Below, piece by piece: positions 45,188-61,022 of a DNA stretch of 64,000 nt; positions within the stretch are counted from its first letter, which is position 1, and every line of letters starts with the position of its first letter. Made by a program: the position numbers and the translations under genes. The notes beneath the pieces were generated by a model. The model was given only the letters and a program-made list of their open reading frames with translations. It was not told the origin of the DNA and did not search any database. Where the stretch lies: the IMG/VR virus record IMGVR_UViG_3300027573_000779, positions 1-64,000 of that record; one strand, 5' to 3'.

Positions 45188-45556
45188 ATGATAGATACTA
45201 GTGCCAAGCCCGAAATAGTTAAAAAAGGTTGGGGCGAAGAAGTAATCATTGTTAATAATGATGAATACTGCGGAAAAATTCTAAAAATAAATGCGGGGCA
45301 CGAATTTTCGTTTCATTTCCATAAACTAAAACTAGAAACTTTTTATGTGCTTAAAGGAATTGCTGCTTTAAAATATCTAGATTTAGCTACCGGAGAAGAG
45401 CTTCAGGCAACTCTACAAAAGGGAGACATTGTTCATATCCCAAGATGCGAACCTCATCAAATTAGTGCCGACTTTGATACCGAAATCATCGAATTTTCAA
45501 CCCATCATGAAGATTCAGACAGCTACAGAATCGCAAAGGGTGACTCCCAAAGGTAG
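45188..45556 (+). CDS. Cupin (sugar isomerase-like)
   Basis: KGWGEE, FHFHKLKLETFYV, PHQ. Confidence 0.85.
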   Translation: MIDTSAKPEIVKKGWGEEVIIVNNDEYCGKILKINAGHEFSFHFHKLKLETFYVLKGIAALKYLDLATGEELQATLQKGDIVHIPRCEPHQISADFDTEIIEFSTHHEDSDSYRIAKGDSQR

Positions 45557-45559
45557 ACT

Positions 45560-46435
45560 ATGATTATTGCAACTTGCGGGGGTATTGGGGACCAAATACT
45601 AGCCTTTCAAGCGGCTAATAGGTTTTGTGCTGAAGGCGGTAATTGTAAGCCTATTATTTACTCATTCTCCAGAAAGGAAGTTTTTGAAGTTTTGTTTACT
45701 TTGTTTGGAAATTATTTCCAGATAAAACATATAGATGATGAAGCTGAACATAAGTTATTAAACGACGAAACTTATAGGAACAAGGTTTTCAAAGACAATG
45801 AATTTGGTTTGGTTTGGCCTGACCTTTTGTGGTCGCACCCATTATCTCTAAAACTTTATGATAGTCACATACAGATAGTTAAACAAATAAGGCTTTTAAC
45901 TAAACATTTAATTCCTGAAAATATTATCTATTTTGGTTTAAATACAACTACTAATGGATATCTTTATAATAATATTGGACAGTTACTTTTAAATACTGCT
46001 AGATTGTTACCAAACCATACAGTTTATTTTCCCAAAATTGATAAATGGAACGCAACGCCCATTAACATAGATTTAGAGTTTGACTTTCCTAAAAACGTCC
46101 ATATTGATACCAATCCAACCTTCCTTAAGAGTCTTGATTATTTAAAGAGAAGCTGTTATGGGGTTTTTGCCGACAATGGCCCTTCTCATATTGCCTATCA
46201 ATTAGGACTGCCCAGACTGGTTTTGGATTCTAGGTTTGGTTTTAATGGGCTTCCATGGGCCGCTCGTTGGAGACAAGACCTTACAGAATCAATTCCTATT
46301 TCTTCCAGTCCTTCAGAAATTGCTAGACTTATTAAAACCAACATTGAAGTCCCCCAAACCTGTCTAATTCCTAGACATACAGTTTTAGTTAATCAAGACG
46401 TAGATTGGAAACAAGTTCTTATAATCAAATACTAG
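45560..46435 (+). CDS. GT9-like glycosyltransferase
   Basis: GGIGDQI, ADNGPSHIA. Confidence 0.7.
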   Translation: MIIATCGGIGDQILAFQAANRFCAEGGNCKPIIYSFSRKEVFEVLFTLFGNYFQIKHIDDEAEHKLLNDETYRNKVFKDNEFGLVWPDLLWSHPLSLKLYDSHIQIVKQIRLLTKHLIPENIIYFGLNTTTNGYLYNNIGQLLLNTARLLPNHTVYFPKIDKWNATPINIDLEFDFPKNVHIDTNPTFLKSLDYLKRSCYGVFADNGPSHIAYQLGLPRLVLDSRFGFNGLPWAARWRQDLTESIPISSSPSEIARLIKTNIEVPQTCLIPRHTVLVNQDVDWKQVLIIKY

Positions 46436-46436
46436 T

Positions 46437-47351
46437 ATGAAAGTTTTAGTTTTAGGTGGATGCGGTTACGTAGGGTCGGCACTTTGTCCTTATTTAAAAA
46501 CTAACGGAATTGAAGTATTTTCTGTTGATTTAGAATGGTTTGGCAATCCAGCGAACATTCCTAATAGAATTTTGGATATGTCTGATATATTGGATATTTC
46601 TCATATAATGCCTTTAGATTATGATGCAATTGTTTTGCTGGCTGGCCATTCAAGCGTCAAAATGTGTTTAAATAATCTTCTTCCAACTTTTAAAAACAAC
46701 GTTCAGAACTTTGTTGAATTGCTTGGCAAGGTTAAAAAGGGCACAAAATTCATTTATGCCAGTAGTTCCAGCGTCTATGGCAAAGTTAATCGTAGTATAA
46801 TGGACGAAAACTGTATTGAGTATGTTTGTAGTAACTATTATGATTTCTCAAAGTTTGAAATCGATAGTTATATGAAAATGAATCAAGACGTTGAGTATTA
46901 TGGTCTTAGGTTTGGAACCATAAATGGCTTTTCTCATAATTTCAGAAACGACATTATGTTGAATTCAATGTATGCGACCGCAATGTCAGACAAAGAAATC
47001 AGAGTTAATAATTTACAAGTAAGAAGACCAATACTTGGAATGTATGATTTATGCAAAGCTATTCTAACTATTCTTAAAAAAGGTTCGTTTGAAAAGCGCG
47101 GAATTTACAATTTAGCTTCATTTAATGGAAGCGTCGATGCTATTTCTCAAAGAGCCGCTAAAATATTAGAGGTTCCAGTTCGTTATATGACCGATACAGA
47201 TGCCTATGATTTTGCCATTTCAACCGGAAAATTTGAAAACACTTTTAAATTTAATTTTGTAGAAACTGTTGATAGTATTTTGTTTAGTATTACAGAAAAC
47301 AAAGATAATTTAGTAATGTCAAATCGTAACCAGCCTAAGTTTTATGATTAA
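46437..47351 (+). CDS. NAD-dependent epimerase/dehydratase (extended SDR)
   Basis: GGCGYVG, ASSSSVYG, YDFSK, LRFGT. Confidence 0.9.
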   Translation: MKVLVLGGCGYVGSALCPYLKTNGIEVFSVDLEWFGNPANIPNRILDMSDILDISHIMPLDYDAIVLLAGHSSVKMCLNNLLPTFKNNVQNFVELLGKVKKGTKFIYASSSSVYGKVNRSIMDENCIEYVCSNYYDFSKFEIDSYMKMNQDVEYYGLRFGTINGFSHNFRNDIMLNSMYATAMSDKEIRVNNLQVRRPILGMYDLCKAILTILKKGSFEKRGIYNLASFNGSVDAISQRAAKILEVPVRYMTDTDAYDFAISTGKFENTFKFNFVETVDSILFSITENKDNLVMSNRNQPKFYD

Positions 47352-48132
47352 AATTGGAGTTACCGCAATTGGTTATAATTGCAACGAACATTTAGCGGCT
47401 GTTCTAAAACCTTGGATGGAACTAAAAGAAGCCTGTCTTTTTGGTAATTTAATTAAGTCTGTTCATATAGCATTTACTCATGGATGCTTTACTGAAACTG
47501 CGCAACTGGGCTATCCAATAATATCCACAGATGGGACTATAGAATACTTAAAAGCTCTTCATGAACTTGGTGATAGTGGAATTGATTTTTTAGACATTAA
47601 AGAAACTCCGCAGCTTGAATATGAGATGTGGACCAATAATTTACCTTATCTCTTTAGTAAAGACATTGATTTGTTGGTAATGCTTAACGCGGACGAACTA
47701 TGGGAGATTAATGAAATTATTAAAGCTGTAACCTACATTAAAGAAACAGAATTCATTGATTATTTTAAAGTTAATTTTAAAAACTATTGTATCGATTATA
47801 ATCATTATGTTTCAGACTTCATAGTCCCCCGTATTTGGTGGGCTAAAAAGAATGGAGGGATTAAAAGGTTTTATCGAGATGACCTGCTTGAATATAATAA
47901 CGGAAAAAGAGATGTGGAGGTTTCCCATAAGGTTATTTCCCCTAATATTATTTTCCCCAAACATTATTCTTGGGTAGGGTCAAAAGAATACCTTCAGCGC
48001 AAATTAGGATTTCAAAAGCTCCGTTATGGCAACTGTTCTTATGCTTGGGATGAAGTTAATGACAGGCTTATGCTGAATGAAGAGTTTTATAAAACTACCG
48101 GATTACCTAAACCAGAGATTTTAAGCGTATGA
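47344..48132 (+). CDS. GT-A-fold glycosyltransferase-like protein
   Basis: LNADELW DxD-like motif; cluster context. Confidence 0.55.
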   Translation: MIKIGVTAIGYNCNEHLAAVLKPWMELKEACLFGNLIKSVHIAFTHGCFTETAQLGYPIISTDGTIEYLKALHELGDSGIDFLDIKETPQLEYEMWTNNLPYLFSKDIDLLVMLNADELWEINEIIKAVTYIKETEFIDYFKVNFKNYCIDYNHYVSDFIVPRIWWAKKNGGIKRFYRDDLLEYNNGKRDVEVSHKVISPNIIFPKHYSWVGSKEYLQRKLGFQKLRYGNCSYAWDEVNDRLMLNEEFYKTTGLPKPEILSV

Positions 48133-49373
48133 GTTATACAACAATAACCAAGTGCCGACTTTGTAAATCAACATCTTTAGATAAAATGTTGGATTTTGGC
48201 GAAGTTCCATTGGCAAATGACTATCCAGAAAAGATAGATTCACCGGTTGAAGCCTATCCCCTTACAGTTTCAAAATGTAAAGGGTGTGGACACGTTCAAC
48301 TAAATGAAACAGTGTCGCCGGAAAGGTTGTTTTCTAATTATACTTATGCCAGTTCAGATTCACCAGCCCTAGTTAAGCATTTTACCGAATATGCAAACAC
48401 GGTAACAAGTAAATTTCGTTTGGGTGATTACTCTCAGATACTAGAATTGGGAATGAATGATGGTGTGCTGCTTGACCAATTTCAGAAGTTGGGACTACTA
48501 CAGCTATTTGGCGTTGACCCCGCTAAAAACATTTGCGAGCTAGCGCAAGAAAAATTAGGGTTTCCAACTAAGATTATAAACGATTTCTTTAATGAGGAAA
48601 CGGCTCTTAAGATGCGAAAACAACATGGGATGTTTGATATTATTTGTGCTAACAACGTCTTTGCTCATGTGGCTGATTTAGATAGTTTTACTAGCGGGGT
48701 GAAAATTTTATTGAGCAAAAATGGGACGTTTATATTTGAAAACGCTTATTTATTTGATACAATAAACAATCTTTATTTGGACCAATTTTATTCAGAACAC
48801 CTACAATATTATGGCATTCTTCCTCTTGTTCAATATTTAGATAAGTTTAAGTTAAAAATCTTTGATATCCAACACGTTAACACTCAAGGAGGTTCTTTTA
48901 GGATATTTGCTTCTCACAAGGACGATACACGAACAGAGCCTATAGTTCAACAATGGATAGACGAAGAGTTGCAGTTTGGTCTCTATAATGAGGACACTTA
49001 TAAAGATTTTAAATTTAGTTTAAATGACCTTCAAGAATCCATGAAAAATACTATGGATTGGATGAAGGAGAACAATTATACTGTTTCTTGTTATGGGTGC
49101 CCTGCAAAATTTGCACTTTTAAGTAAGTTTTTTAACTTTAATCGGGACAATATTCGGTATGTCGTTGACGATTCACCTTTAAAATATGGGAGGTTTTCTC
49201 AGGGTGCGAAAATTCCCATTGTTAATAACCAACATTTTAAAGCCAACCCAACTGATTATACTATCATTTCTACTTGGAATATGGCGGCATCGATTATGGA
49301 ACGAAACCCTAGTTACAACGGGACATGGATAGTTCCTTTACCTGAAATTAAATTTTATGGACCAAAATCCTAA
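48129..49373 (+). CDS. NDP-hexose C-methyltransferase
   Basis: CRLC...PLAN...CKGCGHVQL Zn domain, ELGMNDG, ANNVFAH, YSEH, YGCPAK, DDSPLK. Confidence 0.9.
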   Translation: MSYTTITKCRLCKSTSLDKMLDFGEVPLANDYPEKIDSPVEAYPLTVSKCKGCGHVQLNETVSPERLFSNYTYASSDSPALVKHFTEYANTVTSKFRLGDYSQILELGMNDGVLLDQFQKLGLLQLFGVDPAKNICELAQEKLGFPTKIINDFFNEETALKMRKQHGMFDIICANNVFAHVADLDSFTSGVKILLSKNGTFIFENAYLFDTINNLYLDQFYSEHLQYYGILPLVQYLDKFKLKIFDIQHVNTQGGSFRIFASHKDDTRTEPIVQQWIDEELQFGLYNEDTYKDFKFSLNDLQESMKNTMDWMKENNYTVSCYGCPAKFALLSKFFNFNRDNIRYVVDDSPLKYGRFSQGAKIPIVNNQHFKANPTDYTIISTWNMAASIMERNPSYNGTWIVPLPEIKFYGPKS

Positions 49374-50277
49374 TATAGCATTTTATATTTTAACTTATAA
49401 TAGACCAAACATTTTAAAGGTTTGTTTAGAAACTCTTTTTACCAATACCAATATTAAATATAACGAGGCTTGGCTAATAGACGATGGTTCGCAACCAGAC
49501 TTGAAGCACGGACTTTTAGATTTTAGTATCGCAAACTCAACCGCCTTTCCTATCAATACTCTTATCCATGGAAGAAATTATGGAATTGGTTTTGGGTTTG
49601 AAAGGATATACAACCTAATGCGTCAAAATGATGACTTGGACATTGGTTGCATTATCGAGTCTGATTACGTATGGCGTAAAAATTGGTTAGAAGACGTAGT
49701 GGCAGTTTTCGAAGCTTCACCTTTAACCGTTGCTATAGCAGGGGTATCACATCCAGATATGGTAGATAAAAATAAAACACACGGCACTTTCCCTGAAATA
49801 ATGAAAGAATGTTTTGGTGAAGATTTGACGGCTAGAGAACATCTTTATAAACCTTTTGATTTAAACACATCTGTTGGCTCCGTTAAAGTTCAAGGAGTAA
49901 GTAACTCTTGTGGTTGTCTGATGATTAATTGGAAGAGATTTAAAGAGGTAATAACTACAGTAGATTATCACTATAAATTTAATTATTGGAAAAGAATGGA
50001 CAGAGCTTTTAATAAAGGAATTGCTCATGATACAAGAGCTAATGCTAGCGACGGTCATATGAGTTCTAATATCACTTATTACGGAGAAAAGTATATACTT
50101 ATGCAGGGTGAAGACATTTCTAAACATTTTCCCATGTTGGATATTTGTGACTATAGTATAAGTCAACATATCTGTGGCGGAGGAGTTAATAGTGGACGTA
50201 TGTCAGAAGGAAACACTTTTATTTTGTCTCCAAACTGGAAAGATGAATATATACAAGTAAACCCAAGAAAAATTTAA
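49357..50277 (+). CDS. GT2-like glycosyltransferase
   Basis: ILTYNRP, LIDDGS, IESD. Confidence 0.8.
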   Translation: MDQNPNIAFYILTYNRPNILKVCLETLFTNTNIKYNEAWLIDDGSQPDLKHGLLDFSIANSTAFPINTLIHGRNYGIGFGFERIYNLMRQNDDLDIGCIIESDYVWRKNWLEDVVAVFEASPLTVAIAGVSHPDMVDKNKTHGTFPEIMKECFGEDLTAREHLYKPFDLNTSVGSVKVQGVSNSCGCLMINWKRFKEVITTVDYHYKFNYWKRMDRAFNKGIAHDTRANASDGHMSSNITYYGEKYILMQGEDISKHFPMLDICDYSISQHICGGGVNSGRMSEGNTFILSPNWKDEYIQVNPRKI

Positions 50278-50279
50278 AA

Positions 50280-50684
50280 ATGAACCCAATTCTTAATTTT
50301 GGTCCCGCATATCAAGACGATAGGGGAGTAATTCAAATGGTGGTTGAAGACACGAAGTTCTCTAGTGTATCGGTAATTATAAGTGTTGCTGGTTCAAGTA
50401 GGGCACGGCATTGGCACAAGCAGGATTCTCATATTTGTTTTGTTGTTAAGGGAGAGATTGAATATTACGAACGACCAGTAAACTTAAACATTAAACCAGA
50501 AAAACATATTATTAAAGCTGGCCAACTGTTTTATACTGGACCTTATGTAGAACATGAAATGGTTTTTACTCAGGATACCGAATTTTGGTGTTTTAGTAGT
50601 TTGAGTAGAAAAAACGCGGATTACGAACAAGATACTACTAGGTTTTCTTATTCGTTAAAAGAATTGTATGACAAATCTGTTTGA
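50280..50684 (+). CDS. Cupin (RmlC/WxcM-like sugar epimerase/isomerase)
   Basis: DDRG, RARHWHK, EH. Confidence 0.78.
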   Translation: MNPILNFGPAYQDDRGVIQMVVEDTKFSSVSVIISVAGSSRARHWHKQDSHICFVVKGEIEYYERPVNLNIKPEKHIIKAGQLFYTGPYVEHEMVFTQDTEFWCFSSLSRKNADYEQDTTRFSYSLKELYDKSV

Positions 50685-51723
50685 ACAAGAAAAAGATGAT
50701 TTTAGGTATATAGCTCAAGAGTTAATTGATTCGGGCGACCTGATTAAACTACTTAACAAAACCGTTTTGCTTGTTGGTGGAAGTGGTTTTTTGGGGACTG
50801 CTTTTAAGAAGCTTCTTCTGTATTGTAACGATGTTTTTGACTTAAATTGTAAAATTATCAGTGTCGATAACTATATTAAAGGAACCGTTGTAGCTAGTAA
50901 TGATATTGAGGCTCCAAACCTCATAAATATTACCCACAACATAATCCTTCCAATAAACAAAAAGATATCAAAATACAAGATAGACTATATTTTGAATTGT
51001 AGTGGAAATGCCGCCCCTAAAAACTATTTGACATACCCATGGGAAACTATTGATGTTTCTGTTATAGGAACACGTAATTTGTTAGACTTGGCTGAGATTT
51101 TAAAAATTCCTATTCTAAACTTTAGTAGCTCCGAAGTCCTAGGAACACCACAAGATAAAGATATTCCTACTTCAGAGGATTGTTTACCTTGTTTTAATTC
51201 GACAAACGATAGAGCGCCCTACGATACAAGCAAGTTGATGATTGAAACAATGTCGTTCTTAGCAAAGAAAGAGGGGGTAGATTGTAAAGTGGTGCGCCCG
51301 TTTAACGTGACTGGTTATTTCCATAAAGAGGATTATAGGGTTCTACCTAACTTTTTTGGGAAAGTTTTAAAAGGAGAACCTCTTCAAATTTACAAACCGG
51401 GGACTCAAACTAGAACTTTTTGTTTCTACTCTGACTTTTTAATTGGAGCTTTTAAGGTTCTTTTAAATGATTGTGACCTTATTTATCATATTGGGAATTC
51501 TGACAATGAAATCTCAATGATAGACCTAGCCAACAAAGTCGCGACTCTTTGTAAACATCCCGAATTGGTTGAGTTAGTTGATACTCCCGAAGTTTATAAA
51601 CATGAGCCTAAGCGCAGATGTCCCAGTATAGAGAAGGCGAGGCACGAACTGAGTTACAACCCCAAGGTTAATCTTGACAAAATGCTAAGTAAAATATATC
51701 ATTGGTGTAGAGAAACTTATTAA
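50668..51723 (+). CDS. NAD-dependent epimerase/dehydratase (UDP-glucuronate decarboxylase-like)
   Basis: GGSGFLG, SSSEV, YDTSK, RPFN, QTRTFC, KRRCPSI. Confidence 0.88.
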   Translation: MTNLFEQEKDDFRYIAQELIDSGDLIKLLNKTVLLVGGSGFLGTAFKKLLLYCNDVFDLNCKIISVDNYIKGTVVASNDIEAPNLINITHNIILPINKKISKYKIDYILNCSGNAAPKNYLTYPWETIDVSVIGTRNLLDLAEILKIPILNFSSSEVLGTPQDKDIPTSEDCLPCFNSTNDRAPYDTSKLMIETMSFLAKKEGVDCKVVRPFNVTGYFHKEDYRVLPNFFGKVLKGEPLQIYKPGTQTRTFCFYSDFLIGAFKVLLNDCDLIYHIGNSDNEISMIDLANKVATLCKHPELVELVDTPEVYKHEPKRRCPSIEKARHELSYNPKVNLDKMLSKIYHWCRETY

Positions 51724-55209: not shown

Positions 55210-56189
55210 ATATAGCTTATTTAGATTTTAATGATGAATTAGTAGAAAGTTACGTAACTAATTCTAAGGCTGGAGCTTACGGGGGGGGGCGCGTTTTTGC
55301 GTCTATCGCTAAAGAAGCTTTAGATAATTTTTTTATTTTTGCCAATCCAGAATGTTTTAAACATTTAGCTCCCGACGAGAAGAAGAAAAATTGTATTGGC
55401 TTAAATTCCGAACAAAGAGCGCGAATTCGGGCTGGCGAGCCTGTTAAAGATATTATTCCTTTTGCTGAAGAATTTGACCTTTTTGTCCATCATCAAGTTT
55501 GTCATCATGTTAATATTGAAGGACTTAAGGCGAAAGAGTGTTGTTGGGCAGTAGGATACGGAGAGCCTATTCATCCTCAGAACGAACACTTATTACTTTA
55601 TAATAACTTTCAAAGTCCCCAAGTTACAAATCCTGAGACAAAAGTTTATAAAATTGTAATTGGTAAAGAAATTCCTGAGTTCCAAGAATACAATAAAGAG
55701 AATTTTATCTTTCAATGCACCCGACATTGTGAACAATTTAATTCTATTAATGTAGCAATTTTAGCGAAACATTTTGGTGTTCCTGTTTATTTCGCGGGTC
55801 CAATAGGTAGAGATTATCCTTTGCTTCATTATGTCGATAATCAAATGGTTCATTATTTGGGAATCATCTCAGAGGAAACTAAGATAGATTATTTAAAAAG
55901 AGCAAAAATGTCTACTTTTATTCATACTTGGCCCACACCATTTAGCCTTTCTGCAATCGAGGCTTTATCTTATGGTACTCCAATTTTAGCTACTAATGTA
56001 GGATTTTGGCCTAGTTTGGTTAACGGATTGAATGGGGACCACATCGTTAACTTTGCTGAGTTGCCGAGATTTTTTAATAAAGATTATAAACAGTGGGATT
56101 GTTTTGAAAGCGCGTTACCTTATAGTAGCAAAATAATGTTAAATAACTTTACAAATGTATTTGAGGAGATTTTGAATGAAAAAGATTAA
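55206..56189 (+). CDS. GT4-like glycosyltransferase
   Basis: GGGRV, PFSLSAIEALSYGTPILAT. Confidence 0.8.
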   Translation: MNIAYLDFNDELVESYVTNSKAGAYGGGRVFASIAKEALDNFFIFANPECFKHLAPDEKKKNCIGLNSEQRARIRAGEPVKDIIPFAEEFDLFVHHQVCHHVNIEGLKAKECCWAVGYGEPIHPQNEHLLLYNNFQSPQVTNPETKVYKIVIGKEIPEFQEYNKENFIFQCTRHCEQFNSINVAILAKHFGVPVYFAGPIGRDYPLLHYVDNQMVHYLGIISEETKIDYLKRAKMSTFIHTWPTPFSLSAIEALSYGTPILATNVGFWPSLVNGLNGDHIVNFAELPRFFNKDYKQWDCFESALPYSSKIMLNNFTNVFEEILNEKD

Positions 56190-57192
56190 AGTAGTTGGCG
56201 ACCCAAACAATACCCCTTCTTGTAGCAGCGAGATTATCATCTCAAACCTAAACAAAGGATTAAAAAATCTTGAATTATATGATGAAGACGGTGAATTGGT
56301 TGTTTACGACTGTCTGGCTAACGACCACGGACACAAGACTAATTTCATTATTTGCCCCTATGAAACAGCTATCCCTTTTGTGGTTTTATATAATGCAAAA
56401 AACAGGATTTTAATAGGGGTCTCAAATCAAAATCAAGCCTTTTTTAGTCAGGGGGGCTATCCCAAAGAAAAAACCGATGTGTGTCTTTTAGGAGTAGATA
56501 GTGACCTTTGGCGACCGTTTGATAGACCTCAAAACGACAAATTTACTTTTGGAATGATGTGTGACTCCAACACAAGAGCGGCTTACGACGATTTATTGGC
56601 AGCTTTTTCCGGTATTTTTACTGGAGTGAATGACGTTCGTCTTTTTATTAAAGACAGGTGGGCGACTGAGAAGTTTAAACAGCGGGTTAAAGATATCGCT
56701 AAACGGGACAATTTAGATATTGTTTTAGATGATACTCATATAACTGATAAAGAACAAGAAAGAGTTCTCTATAATAATTTAGATTGCCATATCTTTTTGA
56801 ATCGAAGCTCAACTTTCGCCATGACAGTCGCACAAGGAATGGCTATGCAAAAACCCACTATAGTAATGGATTACAGTGGACCAAGAGATTATTGTAACTC
56901 TTTAAATTCATGTTTAGTCAATTATCGTTTAATGCCGATTGAACAACAAACAATTGATTATCTTCAATTTCTAGGATATAGGAATTATCTTTTGACACCC
57001 AACATGACTTCTTTCCGAACAAATCCCCAATGGGCAATTCCAGACATTTATAATATCAAAGAATGCCTTAAAGAAATTTATCAGAATGCAAACTACAGGT
57101 GTGCAATTGCTTACTATGCTAGAGCAACAGCGGAAGCCATGACATGGACAAAATCAGCAGCTACCCTGTATTCAATTGTAAACAAACATTAA
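56176..57192 (+). CDS. GT4-like glycosyltransferase
   Basis: FAMTVAQGMAMQKPTIVMDYSG. Confidence 0.78.
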   Translation: MKKIKVVGDPNNTPSCSSEIIISNLNKGLKNLELYDEDGELVVYDCLANDHGHKTNFIICPYETAIPFVVLYNAKNRILIGVSNQNQAFFSQGGYPKEKTDVCLLGVDSDLWRPFDRPQNDKFTFGMMCDSNTRAAYDDLLAAFSGIFTGVNDVRLFIKDRWATEKFKQRVKDIAKRDNLDIVLDDTHITDKEQERVLYNNLDCHIFLNRSSTFAMTVAQGMAMQKPTIVMDYSGPRDYCNSLNSCLVNYRLMPIEQQTIDYLQFLGYRNYLLTPNMTSFRTNPQWAIPDIYNIKECLKEIYQNANYRCAIAYYARATAEAMTWTKSAATLYSIVNKH

Positions 57193-57193
57193 A

Positions 57194-57694
57194 ATGTCAC
57201 ACAATTTTAATAGATATACAACCTATAGATATTTTGTGGCCGGACTAGTAAAACAGATGGAACCGGATAATGTTTTAGAAATTGGTCTTGGACATAGCAG
57301 CACCGCAAATGAAATTTTAAAAGTTTTAACAGAATTAAACAAAGGTAAATATTATGCTATTGATACAACCCCTCATCTAGAATATTTAGAAAAATTTAGT
57401 GAAAAGTTTTTTGAGATTGCGACGGGACAATCTTCAATTATTATTTCTAAAAACGATTGGCCTAATTTTGACCTTGTTTTAGTTGATGCGACCCATACTG
57501 AAGAGGCAGTTTATGAAGATACCAAAAATTCAATCCCCAAGTTGAACAAAGAAGGATTATTTGTTTATCATGATGCAAACTCTACGCTAGTAATGAACGG
57601 AATTCAACGCGCCGCTAAAGATTATAACCTTGTAACCTTTTATTTCCCTCAATTTTACACCTCTGTTTCTCGCTATGAAAATTCACATGTTTGA
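57194..57694 (+). CDS. Class I SAM methyltransferase (Methyltransf_24-like)
   Basis: LEIGLGHSS, DLVLVDATH, VYHD. Confidence 0.82.
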   Translation: MSHNFNRYTTYRYFVAGLVKQMEPDNVLEIGLGHSSTANEILKVLTELNKGKYYAIDTTPHLEYLEKFSEKFFEIATGQSSIIISKNDWPNFDLVLVDATHTEEAVYEDTKNSIPKLNKEGLFVYHDANSTLVMNGIQRAAKDYNLVTFYFPQFYTSVSRYENSHV

Positions 57695-58709
57695 TGACGA
57701 TGAGCGCCAGTATACAGACCCAACGTATGCTGTCAACCATGGTCCATTTTCAGAAATATCTATACAGTTAAATAAAGCTTTAAAGAAACTAGACGCTTTT
57801 GCGCCGCCAAACTTAGCTGATTGGGTTGGATATAATACAAGTTTAAATTTAAAATTCCAATATCCAAACAAACAAAGTTTTATTATTACAGTGTGGGAGT
57901 GTAGCGCTATTCCTAATCTTTTAGTCTCAATGGCTAGAGATACAAGAATTTTTGGTCTTTCTCAACAAATAACCGAACTTTGGGATAAATACGGAATTAA
58001 TGCCCCTACTGTTTATCCCGGCTGTGATACAGATTTTTGGAAGCCGGTTTGTGAAAAAAACCCCACTTTTACTTTTCTTCATATCAATAGTTCAAACGTC
58101 CGTTCGGGGTTAGATTTAACAATTCAGGCTTTTCATAAGGTGTTTAAAAATTACCCTTATGTTCAATTAGTTATTAAAGACACCAACGATTCTCCACAGC
58201 TTTGCAATAAGATTCGAAAATACATAGATGAAGGCTCACAAATTTTTTACTATTCAAAAAGAATCAGTTATGAGGAAATTCGAAGGCTATACTCTTCTTC
58301 TCACGTTTGTCTAAATCTCTTAAGAAGCACTTCATTTGGCTTACCCCTTCTTGAATGTTCAGCTTGCGGTTGTCTTTGTGTTACAGGAGATACCAAACCC
58401 ACCAATGAAATTATAAAACCAGAATATGGAGTTTTAGTGCCGCCATCTGACGAAGTGGGGCTTGAAGGAATGGCGTCTTATTTAAGTCAGGAGTGGGGTC
58501 TTAGGAACTGCTATCCTGCGCTTCAATACAATGAAACTCCTAAGTTTTGGGACTTTAGTGTTGAAGAATACGCTAAAACATTGGAAAAAATATACTCCAA
58601 TTGGGATACTACTTACAGCAAAATAGACACCAGAACACCCATAGTTGAAAATTGGACTTGGGAAAAAAGCGCAAAAACTTTAATAAATCTTTTAGAAAAT
58701 GGAATATAG
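57675..58709 (+). CDS. GT4-like glycosyltransferase
   Basis: RSGLD, FGLPLLECSACG. Confidence 0.8.
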   Translation: MKIHMFDDDERQYTDPTYAVNHGPFSEISIQLNKALKKLDAFAPPNLADWVGYNTSLNLKFQYPNKQSFIITVWECSAIPNLLVSMARDTRIFGLSQQITELWDKYGINAPTVYPGCDTDFWKPVCEKNPTFTFLHINSSNVRSGLDLTIQAFHKVFKNYPYVQLVIKDTNDSPQLCNKIRKYIDEGSQIFYYSKRISYEEIRRLYSSSHVCLNLLRSTSFGLPLLECSACGCLCVTGDTKPTNEIIKPEYGVLVPPSDEVGLEGMASYLSQEWGLRNCYPALQYNETPKFWDFSVEEYAKTLEKIYSNWDTTYSKIDTRTPIVENWTWEKSAKTLINLLENGI

Positions 58710-59916
58710 TTGGCCTTTAAATACACCACAATTCAGCTTACTAGACAAACTTAAAATAGCGAAGTTCGTTTTAACTGATTCTCGTTGGACACAAGGAAAG
58801 AAAGTTCAGGAATTTGAACAAAAAATGGCAGAATATGTAGGTTCACGTTATGCTATTTTTACTTCAAGCGGCTCTACTGCTAACACTTTGTTAGCAATGT
58901 ATTTAAGAGACCATTGTTCGCCAGAAAGAAACATAGTTGTTTTTCCTTCAACTACTTGGATTACTTCAGTTTCGCCTTTTATCCGAGAGGGGTTTACTCC
59001 TCGTTTTATTGATATCAATCTTGTTAATTTTTCAATGAATTTGACAGAACTGGAAGAATATTTAAAAAAGAACTCTTCTAAAGTGGCCTGTATTTTTATT
59101 ACGTCATTAATTGGGTTTGTGCCTAATATCCAAACCATTAAGGCAATGGCCAAACATTATAATGTAACAGTAATGATGGATAATTGTGAAAATACTTTAG
59201 GGTCTTTTGAAAACAAAAATGTTTCTTCCTTTTTTACTTCAACAACCAGTACATATTTTGGGCACCAATTACAAAGTGTTGAGGGCGGGTTTGTATTTAC
59301 TAACTCTCTAGAACAACATGATTACTTTTTAATGGCAAGGAATCACGGAATGGTGCGGAGTCTTCCAGAATGGCGACAAAAATTTTATACTAATGGAGAA
59401 GTAGATTCGCGCTTTGATTTCAAAATTTTAGGCAACAATTTTAGAAACTCGGACCTTAATGCCTATATTGGTTTACTTGATTTTGCTCGATTGGAAGAAT
59501 ACTCGCAAAAACGAAAATATCTTTATGAAACTTTTGTAAGTAATTCAAGTGAAAAGCTTTTAATTATGCCTTTTGATTTGTTTTCGTGCAAACATGTTCC
59601 TTTTTGCCTACCTGTTATTTTAAGTCCTAAAGCTACCAAATATGTCGATTTACTTCCTGAATTGGTTGTGGAACTTAAAAAGGCATGTGAAGAAACTGAA
59701 ATCGAAACAAGGCCAATAATATCAGGAAACCTGCTCCGACAAACGTGTTTTAAACAATTTGGTTTTAAACCTAAAGATTTTCCTATAAGCGAATACGTTC
59801 ACAAAAACGGTTTTTATGTTGGTCTTTATGCAAATTTGGAGCCTGAGAGAGTTAGGAATTTTGCTATTAAAGTAAGAACGTATTTAGAGCAACAATTAGG
59901 TATAGCAGAGAGTTAA
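58699..59916 (+). CDS. PLP-dependent DegT-family enzyme, ColD-like (His replaces the catalytic Lys)
   Basis: SSGSTAN, DNCE, STYFGHQLQSVEGG, RNHG. Confidence 0.85.
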   Translation: MEYSWPLNTPQFSLLDKLKIAKFVLTDSRWTQGKKVQEFEQKMAEYVGSRYAIFTSSGSTANTLLAMYLRDHCSPERNIVVFPSTTWITSVSPFIREGFTPRFIDINLVNFSMNLTELEEYLKKNSSKVACIFITSLIGFVPNIQTIKAMAKHYNVTVMMDNCENTLGSFENKNVSSFFTSTTSTYFGHQLQSVEGGFVFTNSLEQHDYFLMARNHGMVRSLPEWRQKFYTNGEVDSRFDFKILGNNFRNSDLNAYIGLLDFARLEEYSQKRKYLYETFVSNSSEKLLIMPFDLFSCKHVPFCLPVILSPKATKYVDLLPELVVELKKACEETEIETRPIISGNLLRQTCFKQFGFKPKDFPISEYVHKNGFYVGLYANLEPERVRNFAIKVRTYLEQQLGIAES

Positions 59917-59918
59917 TT

Positions 59919-61022
59919 ATGAACAATAAAACAGTTGTAATCACCGGAGTAACAGGACAATTGGGGTCACTGTTTTCTGATTATTTACTTAAAAAAGGAT
60001 TTAAGGTTATTGGTACAATTAGGCGTTTAAGTGTTCCTAATCATGAGAACATTGAACATATTAAAAATAATGAAAATTTTAAGCTTGAATTAATGGATTT
60101 GGGGGACCCAATTTCAATTAATGGAATCGTTCAAAAATATCAACCAGATTATTTTATTAATTGTGCGGCTAATAGCTTTGTTGGCGATAGTTGGAAATGC
60201 CCTGTCCAACATTTTCAATATAATACTTTAGGAGTACTAAATCAATTAGAATCTATTAGATTATTTTCTCCAAAAACAAGATATATTAATTTAGGTTCGA
60301 GCGAAGAATTCGGAGATGTGCAGTATAGTCCTCAAAATGAAAAACATCCCTTGAGGGCACGAAGTCCTTATGGCGCTTCAAAAATTGCAGCTAGACAAAT
60401 AGTAAAGGTTTATAGAGAAAGTTATAATCTTTATGCGGTTCAGTCATGGTGCTTCAACTATGAGTCGTTTGCTCGTGGGAAACAGTTTATTTCGAGAAAA
60501 GTCACTTGTGGAATAGCAAATATTTGGAACAAGCTTCATCAAAACAAACCGTTTGAAGCTATTGAGCTTGGTAATATTTATGCAAAACGTGACTGGAGCC
60601 ATGCTTTTGATGTAGTAGAAGGTATTTGGAGAATGCTAAATCAGGAAGATTATAATGATGACATTGCATATGAGCTTAGTCTTGAAGTTGTTAATAAATG
60701 GAACTGTTTGGTTAAAAATATTAAAGAATATGTTTTTTCATCTAATGAAACACACACAGTCAAAGAACTTGTTGAGTTAGCTTTTAAAACTGCTAATATT
60801 GAAGGAGTTTGGGAAGGAGAGGGGATTAACGAAAAATATGTTTTAAAATCTAATCCTTCTGTCACTTTGGTTAGAATCAATCCAGAGTTCTATCGTCCTG
60901 CTGACGTGGAACTTTTGTTAGGTGATTCTTCGTTAGTTCGAAAAGAGTTAGGATGGGAGCCTCAAAGGACTTTTAAAACGTTAGTACAAGAAATGGTTGC
61001 TCATGATATCGCTTTATCATAA
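59919..61022 (+). CDS. gmd: GDP-mannose 4,6-dehydratase
   Basis: ITGVTGQLG, AANSFV, SSEEFG, PRARSPYGASK-type motif, FNYES, RDWSHA, YRPADV. Confidence 0.93.
   Translation: MNNKTVVITGVTGQLGSLFSDYLLKKGFKVIGTIRRLSVPNHENIEHIKNNENFKLELMDLGDPISINGIVQKYQPDYFINCAANSFVGDSWKCPVQHFQYNTLGVLNQLESIRLFSPKTRYINLGSSEEFGDVQYSPQNEKHPLRARSPYGASKIAARQIVKVYRESYNLYAVQSWCFNYESFARGKQFISRKVTCGIANIWNKLHQNKPFEAIELGNIYAKRDWSHAFDVVEGIWRMLNQEDYNDDIAYELSLEVVNKWNCLVKNIKEYVFSSNETHTVKELVELAFKTANIEGVWEGEGINEKYVLKSNPSVTLVRINPEFYRPADVELLLGDSSLVRKELGWEPQRTFKTLVQEMVAHDIALS

What the first reader, a model, noticed from the sequence alone, without database searches (positions are those of the whole stretch)
45188..61022. ~16-kb, 19-gene NDP-sugar synthesis and glycosyltransferase island in a phage
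Seen: Gmd, a DegT-family enzyme, two SDRs, two cupins, Gfo/Idh/MocA, three methyltransferases and about eight GT-like genes, placed between the RNR and RecA/DnaB; another GT4 lies at 38673. Inference: builds a complex methylated deoxy-sugar glycan for the virion, DNA or host surface.
Basis: partly seen in the sequence, partly recalled or inferred. Interest (0 to 1): 0.6.

Follow-up and report, generated by a model that had tools for sequence, protein, structure and literature searches.

The report
Phage sugar-building and glycan-assembly gene island
A 209-kb uncultivated long-tailed phage carries a tightly packed 19-gene operon that should make a rare branched, methylated 3,6-dideoxy sugar and assemble it into an oligosaccharide with seven or eight soluble glycosyltransferases. 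It is a real, conserved example of the poorly understood "glycan islands" of large aquatic phages, but what the glycan is attached to remains unproven.

Summary
Window 45188-61022 holds 19 co-directional ORFs with no gap over 3 nt:
- Gmd
- a DegT-family enzyme
- two further SDRs
- two cupins
- a Gfo/Idh/MocA oxidoreductase
- three methyltransferases
- seven supported GTs plus one doubtful
- one unknown ORF

The contig is a complete 208,933-bp phage. It has a lambda-J-type tail tip, a 5468-aa tape measure, DnaE, RecA and DnaB. The island is not a chimera: its codon usage matches the rest of the genome, and the same cassette is syntenic in independent metagenomic phage contigs.

There are three refinements. 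First, the DegT enzyme is a ColD-type 3-dehydratase with the active-site His, not an aminotransferase. With Gmd and a TylC3/TcaB9-type C-methyltransferase it predicts a GDP-linked, C-methyl-branched 3,6-dideoxyhexose. Second, Gmd next to RecA is a lineage-wide anchor, and the cassette upstream of it is hypervariable. Third, the genome encodes no flippase, polymerase, ligase, priming transferase or sugar nucleotidyltransferase.

DNA glycosylation is disfavoured: ThyA is canonical, and no TET/JBP enzyme or C5-methyltransferase was found. The most likely role is carrier-independent cytoplasmic glycosylation of virion proteins (about 0.4). Remodelling of host LPS core is the main rival. This is a new member of a known but functionally untested kind.

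The parts
45188..45556 (+). g1, small cupin (122 aa). Putative epimerase or isomerase acting on an NDP-4-keto sugar.
   Evidence: PF07883 Cupin_2 4.9e-10, with weak PF14667 and mannose-6-P-isomerase C-terminal hits. Homologues at 38-42% sit in the L013 cassette and inside the replisome gene block of L023/L024.
45560..46435 (+). g2, GT-B glycosyltransferase with a GT9 (heptosyltransferase-family) fold, 291 aa.
   Evidence: No Pfam, NCBIfam or PHROG hit. AF2 model from a 17-sequence alignment has pLDDT 86.6. Foldseek: TibC 1.5e-5, WaaC. VIA: WaaF Z 14.6, WaaC 14.3, TibC 13.1. Homologues at 37-44% occur in syntenic phage contigs.
46437..47351 (+). g3, extended SDR (304 aa). Candidate 4-ketoreductase, with or without epimerase activity, for the deoxy sugar.
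   Evidence: PF01370 1.3e-26. Only weak matches to named equivalogs or PDB entries. 49% identical in L017.
47344..48132 (+). g4, GT-A (GT2-like) glycosyltransferase, 262 aa.
   Evidence: No Pfam hit. ESM Atlas feature score 0.98 and structure TM 0.93-0.65 to virus-specific clusters, some of which carry PF00535. 57% identical in L017 and 35% in L009.
48129..49373 (+). g5, SAM-dependent NDP-sugar C-methyltransferase (TylC3/TcaB9 type).
   Evidence: Methyltransf_13 (Zn) 3.7e-19, class I methyltransferase domain, and Methyltransf_14 2.9e-33. PDB: D-mycarose 3-C-methyltransferase 4rv9 1.5e-64, TcaB9 4.6e-49, aligned over the full length.
49357..50277 (+). g6, GT2 glycosyltransferase without a TM segment. 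It is the best-conserved GT of the cassette.
   Evidence: PF00535 1.2e-9. 62% identical in L017 and 52% in L009. Maximum KD19 hydropathy 1.49.
50280..50684 (+). g7, small cupin (134 aa). Putative C3/C5 epimerase for the 4-keto intermediate.
   Evidence: PF07883 1.5e-7 and PF14667 1.5e-5. Faint match to the Cap5F cupin domain, E 0.35. 54% identical in L017 and 40% in L009.
50668..51723 (+). g8, SDR resembling UDP-glucuronate decarboxylase (UDP-xylose synthase).
   Evidence: PDB human UXS1 2b69 2.9e-38, aligned over the full length. NF008872 2.3e-23. Substrate not proven.
51724..52539 (+). g9, Gfo/Idh/MocA NAD(P) oxidoreductase (271 aa). Candidate sugar 3-oxidoreductase or ketoreductase.
   Evidence: PF01408 2e-21. 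UDP-GlcNAc 3-dehydrogenase and inositol dehydrogenase models match only at the N-terminus. PDB hits.
52518..52889 (+). g10, unknown small acidic helical protein (about 117-123 aa).
   Evidence: No family hit. Homologues at 34-35% lie directly beside Gmd in L015 and L025.
52882..53673 (+). g11, unresolved (263 aa). Possibly carries a GT-B C-terminal-like domain.
   Evidence: Only weak hits: TIGR04372 8e-4 and heptosyltransferase I 2e-3. One homologue in 5.8 billion proteins. AF2 pLDDT 47.6. No profile similarity to g2.
53670..54500 (+). g12, GT-A (GT2-like) glycosyltransferase, 276 aa.
   Evidence: ESM Atlas feature score 0.98 to virus clusters. Structure TM 0.65-0.62 to GT2, Glyco_tranf_2_3 and GnT-I clusters. 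40% identical in L017.
54484..55209 (+). g13, FkbM-family methyltransferase. Likely a sugar O-methyltransferase.
   Evidence: TIGR01444 3.3e-16, PF05050 5.3e-8, weak V. cholerae RfbT hit. Absent from L009 and L017.
55206..56189 (+). g14, GT4-type (GT-B) glycosyltransferase.
   Evidence: PF00534 1.9e-6 and PF13692 3.9e-6. 48% identical in L009.
56176..57192 (+). g15, GT4-type glycosyltransferase, paralogue of g17.
   Evidence: PF00534 1.8e-5 and phrog_2170 7e-6. 25% identical to g17, E 2.6e-13. 34-38% identical in L009 and L017.
57194..57694 (+). g16, small class I methyltransferase (Methyltransf_24). Likely an O-methyltransferase.
   Evidence: PF13578 5e-12. Absent from L009 and L017.
57675..58709 (+). 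g17, GT4 glycosyltransferase.
   Evidence: PF00534 6e-15 and PF13692 3.4e-11. 50% identical in L017 and 40% in L009.
58699..59916 (+). g18, ColD-type PMP-dependent NDP-4-keto-6-deoxyhexose 3-dehydratase (DegT fold).
   Evidence: PF01041 1e-46. Best NCBIfam model is RfbH, 9.6e-43. PDB: ColD/WbdK 2gms 1.3e-35, then CDP-sugar E1 dehydrases, with perosamine synthases far weaker. The query His in 'YFGHQLQSVEGG' aligns with the first His of the ColD 'SHH'. That residue is taken to be His188 because the variant entry 3b8x carries Asn there. It is invariant in phage homologues.
59919..61022 (+). g19, GDP-mannose 4,6-dehydratase (Gmd). This is the lineage-wide anchor gene next to RecA.
   Evidence: PF16363 3.3e-93. 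TIGR01472 276 bits, below the 415-bit cut-off because a roughly 22-aa insertion splits the match. All top PDB hits are Gmd (2z1m 3.7e-68), and the SSE and Y-x3-K motifs align. A Gmd homologue lies upstream of RecA, next to it in most loci, in L009-L012, L022 and L024-L027.
38673..39764 (+). Separate GT4-like glycosyltransferase in the nucleotide-metabolism block. Conserved in relatives, so it is a candidate 'core' GT of the same glycan.
   Evidence: phrog_2170 2e-14 and weak PF13692/PF00534 hits. 42% identical in L010 and 51% in L024, with the same neighbours.

Best explanation
The island is a self-contained cytoplasmic glycan factory of a lytic jumbo siphophage.

Shown by homology:
- Gmd (g19) converts host GDP-mannose to GDP-4-keto-6-deoxymannose.
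- The ColD-type PMP enzyme (g18) removes the 3-OH, giving GDP-4-keto-3,6-dideoxymannose.

Inferred:
- The TylC3/TcaB9-type SAM enzyme (g5) methylates a carbon next to the 4-keto group.
- The two small cupins (g1, g7) epimerise the intermediate, and an SDR (g3, possibly with g9) reduces the 4-keto group. The product would be a GDP-linked, C-methyl-branched 3,6-dideoxyhexose.
- The UXS-like SDR (g8) supplies a pentose donor from host UDP-glucuronate.
- Seven or eight soluble Leloir GTs (one or two GT9-like, three GT-A/GT2, three GT4) assemble a hetero-oligosaccharide.
- Two O-methyltransferase-type enzymes (g13, g16) cap it.

No lipid-carrier priming, flipping, polymerising or ligating protein is encoded anywhere in the genome. 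Assembly is therefore proposed to occur directly on a soluble acceptor in the cytoplasm. The most likely acceptor is a set of virion proteins, as in chloroviruses, mimiviruses and mycobacteriophages. That would give a surface glycan whose outer part varies between related phages.

Confidence by layer: about 0.85 that it is a genuine phage glycan-biosynthesis operon, about 0.7 for the Gmd plus ColD 3,6-dideoxy route, about 0.5 for C-methyl branching of that same sugar, and about 0.4 for virion proteins as the acceptor.
For: Enzyme assignments:
- Family scans.
- ColD similarity and the aligned active-site His.
- C-methyltransferase, full-length match to 4rv9 and TcaB9.
- UXS-like SDR.
- Gmd with catalytic motifs.
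- GT folds.

Operon packing.

Native phage DNA: RSCU r=0.977 against controls of 0.957+-0.028. The block g2-g3-g4-g12-g5-g6-g7-g8-g9-...-g15-g17-ColD is syntenic at 37-62% identity in a 179-kb contig (L017). Thirteen of the 19 genes, plus RecA, DnaB and DnaE, are shared with L009.

Lineage architecture: Gmd lies upstream of RecA, adjacent in most loci, in nine related loci, while the cassette upstream differs. In L011 a split PDH-E1-like TPP enzyme, a second DegT and a second 4,6-dehydratase replace the C-methyltransferase block. This fits variable branching chemistry on the same ColD product. Such variability is typical of exposed glycans.

No membrane machinery:
- None of the 19 proteins has a TM-like segment.
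- The only ORF with at least 3 TM-like segments in 209 kb is a 223-aa lipoprotein-like ORF at 44316-44987.
- No Bac_transf priming transferase.
- No NTP_transferase.

Precedent: virion glycosylation by phage GTs is summarised in PMC12619734, citing Freeman et al. 2023. Chlorovirus and mimivirus precedents are from my own knowledge.
Against: - No virion protein was shown or predicted to be glycosylated.
- The island sits in the replication and nucleotide-metabolism block (RNR ... RecA-DnaB-DnaE), not among structural genes. Structural-gene neighbourhood is where I recall mycobacteriophage GTs lie.
- O-antigen and LPS-core GTs of bacteria are also soluble or peripheral. The lack of TM segments in the GTs is therefore not by itself diagnostic.
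- GT9, GT4, 3,6-dideoxyhexoses and terminal O-methylation are classic LPS features.
- The order of action of ColD and the C-methyltransferase, the nucleotide carried by each intermediate, and the substrates of g3, g8 and g9 are inferred, not demonstrated.
- The host is unknown.
Confidence: 0.4

Rival explanations
1. Remodelling of the host envelope. The soluble GT9, GT4 and GT2 enzymes extend host lipid A-core (LOS-type) or a host Und-PP-linked intermediate at the cytoplasmic face of the inner membrane. Host MsbA/Lpt, or host Wzx/WaaL, then export the product. Infected cells would display a new branched dideoxy and methylated epitope that blocks superinfection or stops progeny re-adsorbing to infected cells and debris.
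For: - GT9 is the LPS heptosyltransferase family. g2 matches WaaF and WaaC best (Z 14.6 and 14.3), and a second GT9 gene lies at genome position 74921-76096 (PF01075 1.4e-8).
- 3,6-dideoxyhexoses and RfbT-like terminal methylation are O-antigen hallmarks.
- Core extension needs no phage-encoded membrane protein, which fits.
- The position among replication-block genes would suit an effect that must start before lysis.
- This is the standing hypothesis for the 24 'LPS genes' of P-SSM2 (PMC1079782) and the 22 cell-wall genes of S-SCSM2R (PMC12801897).
- A lambda-J-type tail tip suggests a Gram-negative host (inference).
Against: - I know of no experimental case of a lytic phage building an oligosaccharide on host LPS, and the literature searches here turned up none.
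- No Kdo, heptose or lipid A genes are present here.
- Conservation of 'core' GTs across relatives with GC from 29% to 40%, and so probably different hosts, fits a phage-encoded acceptor better than a host one.
- The host is unknown.
Confidence: 0.27
2. DNA hypermodification. Some or all of the GTs glycosylate a modified base in phage DNA to evade restriction or CRISPR. The island would supply unusual NDP-sugars, as in T4, RB69/DLP3 and the MT-5mYOX-GT clusters.
For: - The island and three further GT genes are embedded in the replication block: RNR, dNMP-kinase-like, RecA, DnaB, primase, DnaE.
- DNA-modifying GT clusters are reported next to polymerases and helicases and can include epimerases and secondary GTs, including GT9-like folds and heptose (bioRxiv 10.1101/2023.12.21.572611).
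- In the independent jumbo contig L013, the ColD/GT cluster also abuts dCMP deaminase, RNR and a UvsX-like gene.
Against: - No enzyme that makes a hydroxylated pyrimidine was found.
- The only ThyA-family gene is canonical. The equivalents of E. coli L143, C146, D169 and N177 are all retained, read against the criteria of PMC13326640.
- No Tet_JBP and no C5 DNA methyltransferase.
- Known DNA glycans have one to three sugars. Seven or eight GTs plus three methyltransferases is far more than needed.
- All island GTs are neutral to acidic (K+R <= D+E). This is weak evidence against DNA binding.
Confidence: 0.08
3. Glycosylation of a host protein or another soluble product. The target could be host flagellin or pilin, which are glycosylated in the cytoplasm by comparable islands in bacteria. 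Alternatively the product could be a cytoplasmic or secreted methylated oligo- or polysaccharide or a small-molecule glycoside.
For: The all-soluble enzyme set and carrier-independent logic are the same as in the best explanation. The block of C-methyltransferase, cupin, SDR and Gfo-type reductase resembles branched deoxysugar pathways of natural-product clusters (TylC3/TcaB9 relatives). The comparison with those pathways is from my own knowledge.
Against: There is no aglycone-forming or export gene nearby, and no flagellin- or pilin-related gene. Nothing specific supports this over the virion reading.
Confidence: 0.1
4. Assembly chimera or very recent capture of a bacterial polysaccharide locus with no phage function.
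For: GC is slightly lower than the genome mean, 0.347 against 0.373. Nothing else supports it.
Against: - Codon usage is indistinguishable from the rest of the phage.
- Strand and packing are continuous with flanking phage genes.
- The same cassette is joined to the same phage genes in independent metagenomes.
- The closest bacterial loci found (Hydromonas, 51-53% ColD identity) share only that one gene.
Confidence: 0.01

Closest known systems
'LPS' or cell-wall-synthesis gene clusters of large cyanomyoviruses (P-SSM2: 24 genes in two clusters; S-SCSM2R: 22 genes including 13 GTs; S-SCSM1). Sources: PMC1079782, PMC12801897.
   Same: Many NDP-sugar epimerase, dehydratase and GT genes are clustered in a lytic aquatic phage of about 200 kb. 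Gmd is often present. No function has been demonstrated. This genome also has a high GT count: 7-8 in the island plus 3 elsewhere.
   Different: The phage lineage is different: a non-contractile tail with a lambda-J-type tip, DnaE and RecA, and not T4-like. Identities to cultured-phage genes are at most 38%. The chemistry also differs. The ColD-type 3-dehydratase has relatives of at most 33% identity in GenBank phage records. The C-methyltransferase matches only seven such records. One of them, Synechococcus phage DSL-LC02, also has it beside Gmd. Here the island is one compact operon at a conserved Gmd-RecA anchor.
Bacterial GDP-colitose pathway (ManB/ManC-Gmd-ColD-ColC) of O-antigen loci, e.g. 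E. coli O55 WbdK/ColD (PDB 2gms, 3gr9).
   Same: A Gmd gene is immediately adjacent to a ColD-type enzyme with the His-for-Lys active site. An SDR is available as the reductase.
   Different: There is no ManB or ManC and no clear ColC orthologue. A C-methyltransferase, two cupins, a Gfo-type oxidoreductase and a UXS-like SDR are added. There is no Wzx, Wzy or WaaL context.
Branched-chain deoxysugar pathways using TylC3/TcaB9-type C-methyltransferases (mycarose, tetronitrose), and the predicted GDP-mannose-derived virenose pathway of Coxiella burnetii (PMC3539893).
   Same: g5 has the same three-domain C-methyltransferase architecture with full-length PDB matches. It is co-located with a cupin, an SDR and a Gfo/Idh/MocA oxidoreductase. 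From my own knowledge, these are the classes used for epimerisation and ketoreduction in those pathways. Like virenose, the pathway starts from GDP-mannose via Gmd.
   Different: No 2,3-dehydratase and no dTDP-glucose enzymes are present. 3-deoxygenation by ColD is not part of those pathways. The product here is predicted, not known.
Virus-encoded virion glycosylation: mycobacteriophage capsid and tail-tube glycosylation (Freeman et al. 2023, as cited in PMC12619734), chlorovirus PBCV-1 capsid glycans, and mimivirus fibril glycosylation clusters (the last two from my own knowledge).
   Same: Soluble virus-encoded GTs act without a lipid carrier. In chloroviruses and mimiviruses the virus also encodes NDP-sugar enzymes (Gmd in PBCV-1), and the glycans include methylated and pentose residues.
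   Different: No glycosylated virion protein is known here. The genes are not in the structural module. Mycobacteriophages use only a few GTs and no sugar-synthesis genes. Membership cannot be tested by sequence.
Phage DNA sugar-hypermodification clusters: T4 alpha/beta-GT, arabinosyl-5hoC of RB69/DLP3 (PMC13326640), and MT-5mYOX-GT clusters (10.1101/2023.12.21.572611).
   Same: GTs and sugar-modifying enzymes lie next to replication genes.
   Different: The defining base-hydroxylating enzyme is absent. The island is far larger than any such cluster.

Membership tests
Phage glycan ('LPS'/cell-wall synthesis) gene islands of large aquatic phages | Lies within a bona fide phage genome rather than host DNA | tested here: met
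   Virus record rated 100% complete. J-like tail tip and DnaE, tape-measure domain. Codon usage matches the genome. Synteny in independent phage contigs.
Phage glycan ('LPS'/cell-wall synthesis) gene islands of large aquatic phages | Cluster of several NDP-sugar-modifying enzymes together with several glycosyltransferases | tested here: met
   Eight sugar-tailoring enzymes (Gmd, the ColD-type enzyme, two SDRs, two cupins, a Gfo-type oxidoreductase, the C-methyltransferase), two further methyltransferases and 7-8 GTs in 15.8 kb.
Phage glycan ('LPS'/cell-wall synthesis) gene islands of large aquatic phages | Modifies the host cell surface (the hypothesis attached to the family name) | not testable with these tools
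   Not demonstrated for any member (PMC1079782, PMC12801897). No host or expression data are available here.
GDP-colitose / 3,6-dideoxyhexose pathway | GDP-mannose 4,6-dehydratase with catalytic S/T-E and Y-x3-K | tested here: met
   All top PDB hits are Gmd (3.7e-68) and the motifs align. The score is below the NCBIfam equivalog cut-off (276 against 415 bits) because of an insertion.
GDP-colitose / 3,6-dideoxyhexose pathway | ColD/E1-type PMP-dependent 3-dehydratase: His replaces the PLP-binding Lys of DegT aminotransferases | tested here: met
   Best PDB hits are ColD/WbdK (1.3e-35) and CDP-sugar E1 (8.5e-27). The query His aligns with the ColD residue taken as His188, identified from the Asn variant entry 3b8x. 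It is invariant in three phage homologues.
GDP-colitose / 3,6-dideoxyhexose pathway | ColC-type bifunctional 5-epimerase/4-reductase | tested here: inconclusive
   g3 is an extended SDR with no specific equivalog or close PDB relative. Separate cupins could supply the epimerase step.
GDP-colitose / 3,6-dideoxyhexose pathway | ManB/ManC supplying GDP-mannose | tested here: not met
   No NTP_transferase family match in the 209-kb genome. GDP-mannose must come from the host.
TylC3/TcaB9 NDP-sugar C-methyltransferases | Zn-binding N-domain, class I SAM domain and C-terminal Methyltransf_14 domain, with full-length similarity to characterised enzymes | tested here: met
   PF08421, PF08242/08241 and PF08484. 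4rv9 1.5e-64 over residues 5-406 and TcaB9 4.6e-49.
TylC3/TcaB9 NDP-sugar C-methyltransferases | Methylates C-3 of an NDP-4-keto sugar | not testable with these tools
   Regiochemistry and nucleotide specificity need an enzyme assay.
Wzx/Wzy- or ABC-transporter-dependent O-antigen or capsule locus | Initiating polyprenyl-phosphate glycosyl-phosphate transferase (WbaP/PglC or WecA type) | tested here: not met
   No PF02397 match. No polytopic membrane ORF anywhere in the genome.
Wzx/Wzy- or ABC-transporter-dependent O-antigen or capsule locus | Flippase, polymerase and ligase, or a Wzm/Wzt transporter | tested here: not met
   Hydropathy scan of all ORFs of at least 100 aa. Only 44316-44987 (223 aa, 4 segments) has 3 or more TM-like segments. 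This was a scan for hydrophobic segments, not a family search for each protein.
Serotype-converting GtrABC modules of temperate phages | GtrA flippase, GtrB bactoprenol glucosyltransferase and a polytopic Gtr(type) transferase | tested here: not met
   No polytopic membrane proteins. The GT2 g6 lacks the C-terminal TM helices of GtrB-type enzymes. GtrA/GtrB families were not searched by name.
Phage DNA sugar-hypermodification clusters | Enzyme creating a hydroxylated pyrimidine: a ThyA homologue with altered specificity residues, or a 5mYOX/TET with or without a C5-methyltransferase | tested here: not met
   There is a single ThyA-family gene with canonical L143, C146, D169 and N177 equivalents (criteria from PMC13326640). 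No PF12851 and no PF00145. A very divergent oxygenase could have been missed.
Phage DNA sugar-hypermodification clusters | GTs adjacent to DNA-synthesis genes | tested here: met
   RNR upstream and RecA/DnaB downstream. Further GTs lie after DnaE.
Virion-glycosylation systems (mycobacteriophage, chlorovirus, mimivirus) | Virus-encoded soluble GTs acting without a lipid carrier | tested here: inconclusive
   All GTs are soluble and no carrier machinery is encoded. Use of host carrier machinery cannot be excluded.
Virion-glycosylation systems (mycobacteriophage, chlorovirus, mimivirus) | Glycan demonstrably attached to capsid, tail or fibril proteins | not testable with these tools
   Needs virions. 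The phage is known only as a metagenomic contig.

The most novel reading that the evidence does not exclude
This uncultivated jumbo-siphophage lineage coats its virions with a viral analogue of LPS architecture. GTs conserved across the lineage (38673-type GT4, a 656-aa GT and a GT9 after DnaE), together with Gmd, lay down an inner glycan. A hypervariable cassette of about 3-16 kb, anchored at the Gmd-RecA junction, writes a strain-specific outer glycan. That outer part would be built around branched 3,6-dideoxyhexoses: C-methyl here, and a two-carbon TPP-derived branch in the relative L011. The result would be a 'phage O-antigen' under diversifying selection.
Probability: 0.25. Interest if true: 0.75.

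Novelty: new member of a known kind. Interest (0 to 1): 0.5.

Why it matters
Large aquatic phages have been known since 2005 to carry clusters of 'LPS-like' sugar genes, and no one has shown what they do. This island is unusually clean to test. It is one operon with a predictable two-step entry (Gmd then ColD), and the expected mass shifts of the nucleotide sugar are -18, -16 and +14 Da. It has no membrane components, and its relatives carry swapped cassettes at the same anchor.

If the glycan decorates virions, complex and variable glycan coats would extend from giant viruses and mycobacteriophages to environmental tailed phages. That would bear on adsorption, stability, grazing and immune recognition. 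If it instead remodels host LPS, it would be the first worked example of a lytic phage rewriting the cell surface.

The enzymes are also of interest for glycoengineering. They include a GDP-linked C-methyltransferase, small cupin epimerases and compact GT9, GT-A and GT4 transferases that would use rare-sugar donors.

Tried and rejected
- Megablast of the island against 50,697 phage records found no match. Close relatives exist only in metagenomes.
- The sigma-70 promoter and terminator scan of 43.5-62 kb was no different from shuffled sequence: 72 against 65.8+-8.1 promoters and 9 against 10.8+-3.7 terminators.
- A k-mer search of upstream regions found a probable early-promoter family (TTGACATTTTAAAAAGAT-like) at 154-208 kb, but nothing shared with the 200-bp gap before the island. 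Expression timing therefore could not be inferred.
- The g11 structure model was unusable (pLDDT 47.6). Profile comparison of g11 with the g2 family was negative.
- Both cupins have only marginal similarity to solved structures.
No read mapping, coverage check or expression evidence was possible, and read laying was not used.
- The Freeman et al. 2023 paper is not held and is cited only through PMC12619734.
- Membership in the 'moraphage' lineage (PMC12619734) was considered and rejected. Those phages have contractile tails and no identified tape-measure gene. This phage has no sheath match, a J-type tip and a tape-measure protein.
- The two Hydromonas loci found with the ColD profile share only that gene with the phage, so they say nothing about host or origin.
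- Foldseek against viral models shows only that GT9-like proteins are widespread in uncultured phages, cyanophages and giant viruses.

Full report
**What is there.** The window is the first 64 kb of a single 208,933-bp IMG/VR virus contig that CheckV rates as complete. It is a phage, on the following evidence:
- a lambda-J-type central tail fibre (phrog_31, 1e-146) and a DnaE-type polymerase
- RecA and DnaB
- a 5468-aa ORF with a tape-measure domain
- no tail sheath
- Hoc-like and Rnl1-like genes and four tRNAs

It is remote from all cultured phages. Megablast finds nothing, and core proteins are at most 32% identical to their nearest relatives.

From 45188 to 61022 there are 19 ORFs on the + strand. 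Twelve junctions overlap and none has a gap over 3 nt. A 200-bp gap lies upstream of the block and a 46-bp gap downstream.

| Class | Position(s) |
|---|---|
| Gmd | 59919 |
| DegT-fold enzyme | 58699 |
| SDRs | 46437, 50668 |
| cupins | 45188, 50280 |
| Gfo/Idh/MocA | 51724 |
| C-methyltransferase | 48129 |
| FkbM methyltransferase | 54484 |
| Methyltransf_24 | 57194 |
| GT2 | 49357 |
| GT4 | 55206, 56176, 57675 |

Three 'hypothetical' ORFs are also GTs.
- 45560 folds with confidence (pLDDT 86.6) into a GT-B protein. Its best structural neighbours are the GT9 heptosyltransferases WaaF, WaaC and TibC, at Z 14.6 to 13.1.
- 47344 and 53670 are GT-A proteins that belong to virus-specific clusters.
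- 52882 remains doubtful, and 52518 is unknown.

The island therefore holds seven supported GTs plus one possible. Three more GT genes lie elsewhere: 38673 in the window, and 72951-74921 and 74921-76096 just after DnaE.

**Chemistry.**
- The Gmd assignment is solid. All top PDB hits are Gmd and the catalytic motifs align. A roughly 22-aa insertion explains the sub-threshold equivalog score.
- The DegT-fold enzyme is not an aminotransferase. Its closest solved relatives are ColD/WbdK (1e-35) and the CDP-sugar E1 dehydrases. It has His where ColD has the residue I take to be His188, identified from the Asn variant entry 3b8x. Aminotransferases have the Schiff-base Lys at this position. The His is invariant in phage homologues.
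- Gmd plus ColD gives GDP-4-keto-3,6-dideoxymannose. This rests on established enzymology of the colitose pathway.
- The 414-aa methyltransferase is a full-length TylC3/TcaB9-type sugar C-methyltransferase (4rv9 1.5e-64). These enzymes alkylate the carbon next to a 4-keto group.
- From my own knowledge, small cupins, an SDR and a Gfo/Idh/MocA oxidoreductase are the classes that epimerise and reduce such intermediates in branched-deoxysugar pathways.
- I therefore infer a GDP-linked, C-methyl-branched 3,6-dideoxyhexose. The order of the steps and the regiochemistry are not shown.
- The second SDR is most like UDP-glucuronate decarboxylase (UXS1, 3e-38), which suggests a pentose donor.
- The FkbM and Methyltransf_24 enzymes are probably sugar O-methyltransferases.
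- No sugar-1-phosphate nucleotidyltransferase exists in the genome. The host must supply GDP-mannose, UDP-GlcA and SAM.

**Not a chimera, and conserved.**
- Codon usage of the island correlates with the rest of the genome at r=0.977. Random 19-gene blocks give 0.957+-0.028.
- A 179-kb metagenomic contig (L017) carries g2-g3-g4-g12-g5-g6-g7-g8-g9-GT-g15-g17-ColD in the same order at 37-62% identity.
- L009 shares 13 of the 19 genes. Its downstream genes follow the same order, from RecA through DnaB to DnaE.

**Lineage architecture.** A second scan seeded with DnaB was combined with the first. In nine related loci (L009-L012, L022, L024-L027), Gmd lies upstream of RecA, adjacent in most. The backbone that follows is RecA-x-DnaB-primase-PD-(D/E)XK-PHP-RNase T-DnaE, and in L022 and L024 a large GT follows DnaE, with the GT9 gene after it in L024.

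What lies upstream of Gmd varies.
- A marine relative, TARA scaffold L029, has only a cupin, two small ORFs and a 315-aa ORF between a class I RNR and Gmd.
- L011 has ColD-Gmd preceded by three GT4-like genes, a GT2, a second DegT, a second 4,6-dehydratase, two SDRs and a split PDH-E1-like TPP enzyme. From my own knowledge, that is the enzyme type that attaches two-carbon branches to 4-keto-3,6-dideoxy sugars (yersiniose-type).
- An unrelated 223-kb contig (L013) combines a ColD homologue with HldE-like kinase and nucleotidyltransferase genes and a GT9 gene, next to dCMP deaminase, RNR and a UvsX-like gene.

The locus is therefore a conserved anchor with a hypervariable glycan cassette. In this phage the cassette has expanded to 16 kb. 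Both O-methyltransferases, g11 and g10 are not shared with L009 or L017.

**Where does the glycan go?** Three observations constrain the answer.

1. No membrane machinery is encoded. None of the 19 proteins has a TM-like segment. Across all ORFs of at least 100 aa in the genome, only 44316-44987 has three or more such segments. That ORF has a lipoprotein-type signal peptide followed by C-terminal TM helices, has no family match and is not conserved with the island. There is no PglC/WbaP-type priming transferase. A self-sufficient Wzx/Wzy, ABC-transporter or GtrABC route is therefore excluded.
2. No known DNA handle is present. The single ThyA-family gene keeps the L143, C146, D169 and N177 equivalents that mark true dTMP synthases, read against the criteria of PMC13326640. 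No TET/JBP and no C5-methyltransferase was found. Known DNA glycans also have at most three sugars.
3. The genes sit in the replication block, not among structural genes. The enzyme families present (GT9, GT4, dideoxyhexose synthesis, terminal methylation) are those of LPS.

Virus-encoded, carrier-independent glycosylation of virion proteins has experimental precedent. The examples are mycobacteriophages (via PMC12619734) and, from my own knowledge, chloroviruses and mimiviruses. The literature searches here turned up no case of a lytic phage building a glycan on host LPS, and I know of none. It remains the untested hypothesis attached to P-SSM2 and S-SCSM2R (PMC1079782, PMC12801897). 'Core' GTs are also conserved across relatives whose GC ranges from 29% to 40%, and those relatives probably infect different hosts. 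That favours a phage-encoded acceptor.

I therefore rank the options as follows: virion-protein glycosylation about 0.4, host LPS-core or LOS remodelling about 0.27, another soluble acceptor about 0.1, DNA about 0.08, and artefact about 0.01.

**Comparison and novelty.** Large sugar and GT clusters in aquatic phages of about 200 kb are a known kind with unknown function. Two things are particular here.
- The chemistry is unusual for phages. ColD relatives in GenBank phage records are at most 33% identical, mostly in Synechococcus phage ACG-2014f. The C-methyltransferase matches only seven such records, mostly huge metagenomic phages, plus Synechococcus phage DSL-LC02, where it also sits beside Gmd.
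- The anchor-plus-variable-cassette organisation occurs in a previously undescribed jumbo siphophage lineage.

I rate it a new member of a known kind, of moderate interest, and experimentally tractable.

**Limits.**
- The host, the expression timing and the acceptor are unknown.
- Read-level checks could not be run.
- Several specificities (g1, g3, g7, g8, g9 and all the GTs) are class-level inferences only.

Noticed in passing
outside the window: genome 115243-131649 (+), locus L004:243-16646: A single 5468-aa ORF carries a PhageMin_Tail (tape-measure) domain near its N-terminus, at residues 121-307 (7e-27), and lies downstream of a lambda-J-like tip gene (85070-89035). No tail sheath was found. 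If tail length scales with tape-measure length as usual, this phage would have an exceptionally long non-contractile tail.
   Followed up: partly
window 40573-43827 (+): The ribonucleotide reductase ORF is 1084 aa, but phage RNRs align to only 57-69% of it, in 2-4 pieces. A weak intein C-terminal splicing motif lies inside it at 43105-43221 (E 1.9e-4, below the cut-off). It is probably a class II RNR interrupted by an intein or other insertion. The relative L024/L029 has a class I NrdA/NrdB pair at this position instead.
   Followed up: partly
window 19901-21310 (-): This adenylosuccinate-synthetase-family gene matches the PHROG annotated as PurZ, the 2-aminoadenine (Z-base) pathway enzyme (9e-78). 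Its best solved relatives are ordinary PurA enzymes (1e-31). Whether the phage makes Z-DNA is unresolved. A dNMP-kinase-like gene (36833) and a DUF1937 nucleoside-deoxyribosyltransferase-like gene (39745) are nearby.
   Followed up: partly
window 28772-29869 (-): The thymidylate synthase has a canonical active site, but it carries an extra insertion of about 46 aa (residues about 212-258) relative to even the long Lactobacillus/Enterococcus-type ThyA.
   Followed up: partly
window 44316-44987 (+): This 223-aa ORF sits immediately upstream of the island. It has a lipoprotein-type signal peptide (…FIVSC), a Ser/Thr-rich middle and three C-terminal TM helices. It is the only multi-TM ORF in the genome, has no family match and is not conserved in relatives. 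It could be a superinfection-exclusion or lysis-related lipoprotein.
   Followed up: partly
outside the window: genome 72951-76096 (+), L001:8951-12096: Two further GT genes follow DnaE: a 656-aa GT4-like protein with an extra C-terminal domain, and a 391-aa GT9-family protein (PF01075 1.4e-8). Both are conserved at 36-53% in L024, and the 656-aa GT also at 51% in L022. Partial homologues of both lie inside the ColD cluster of L013, which links them functionally to the island.
   Followed up: partly
L011:6296-7463 (relative's cassette): A split pyruvate-dehydrogenase-E1-like TPP enzyme (E1_dh plus Transket_pyr) lies next to a second DegT and a second 4,6-dehydratase, upstream of ColD-Gmd. This suggests a two-carbon-branched (yersiniose-like) dideoxy sugar in that phage, in place of the C-methyl branch.
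   Followed up: partly
outside the window: genome about 154-208 kb, '-' strand: A shared upstream motif family (TTGACATTTTAAAAAGAT-like 9-mers in up to 15 upstream regions) precedes many small ORFs. These are probably the phage's early promoters.
   Followed up: no
L028 (IMGVR_UViG_3300012041_000052): A 29-kb contig from another sample encodes a DnaB C-terminus 100% identical to this phage's, so the same phage or a near-identical one occurs in a second metagenome.
   Followed up: no
window 52518-52889 (+); L015:4066-4407; L025:3088-3432: Homologues of the unknown 123-aa protein g10 sit directly upstream of Gmd in two other phage contigs. This hints at a functional link with Gmd.
   Followed up: no
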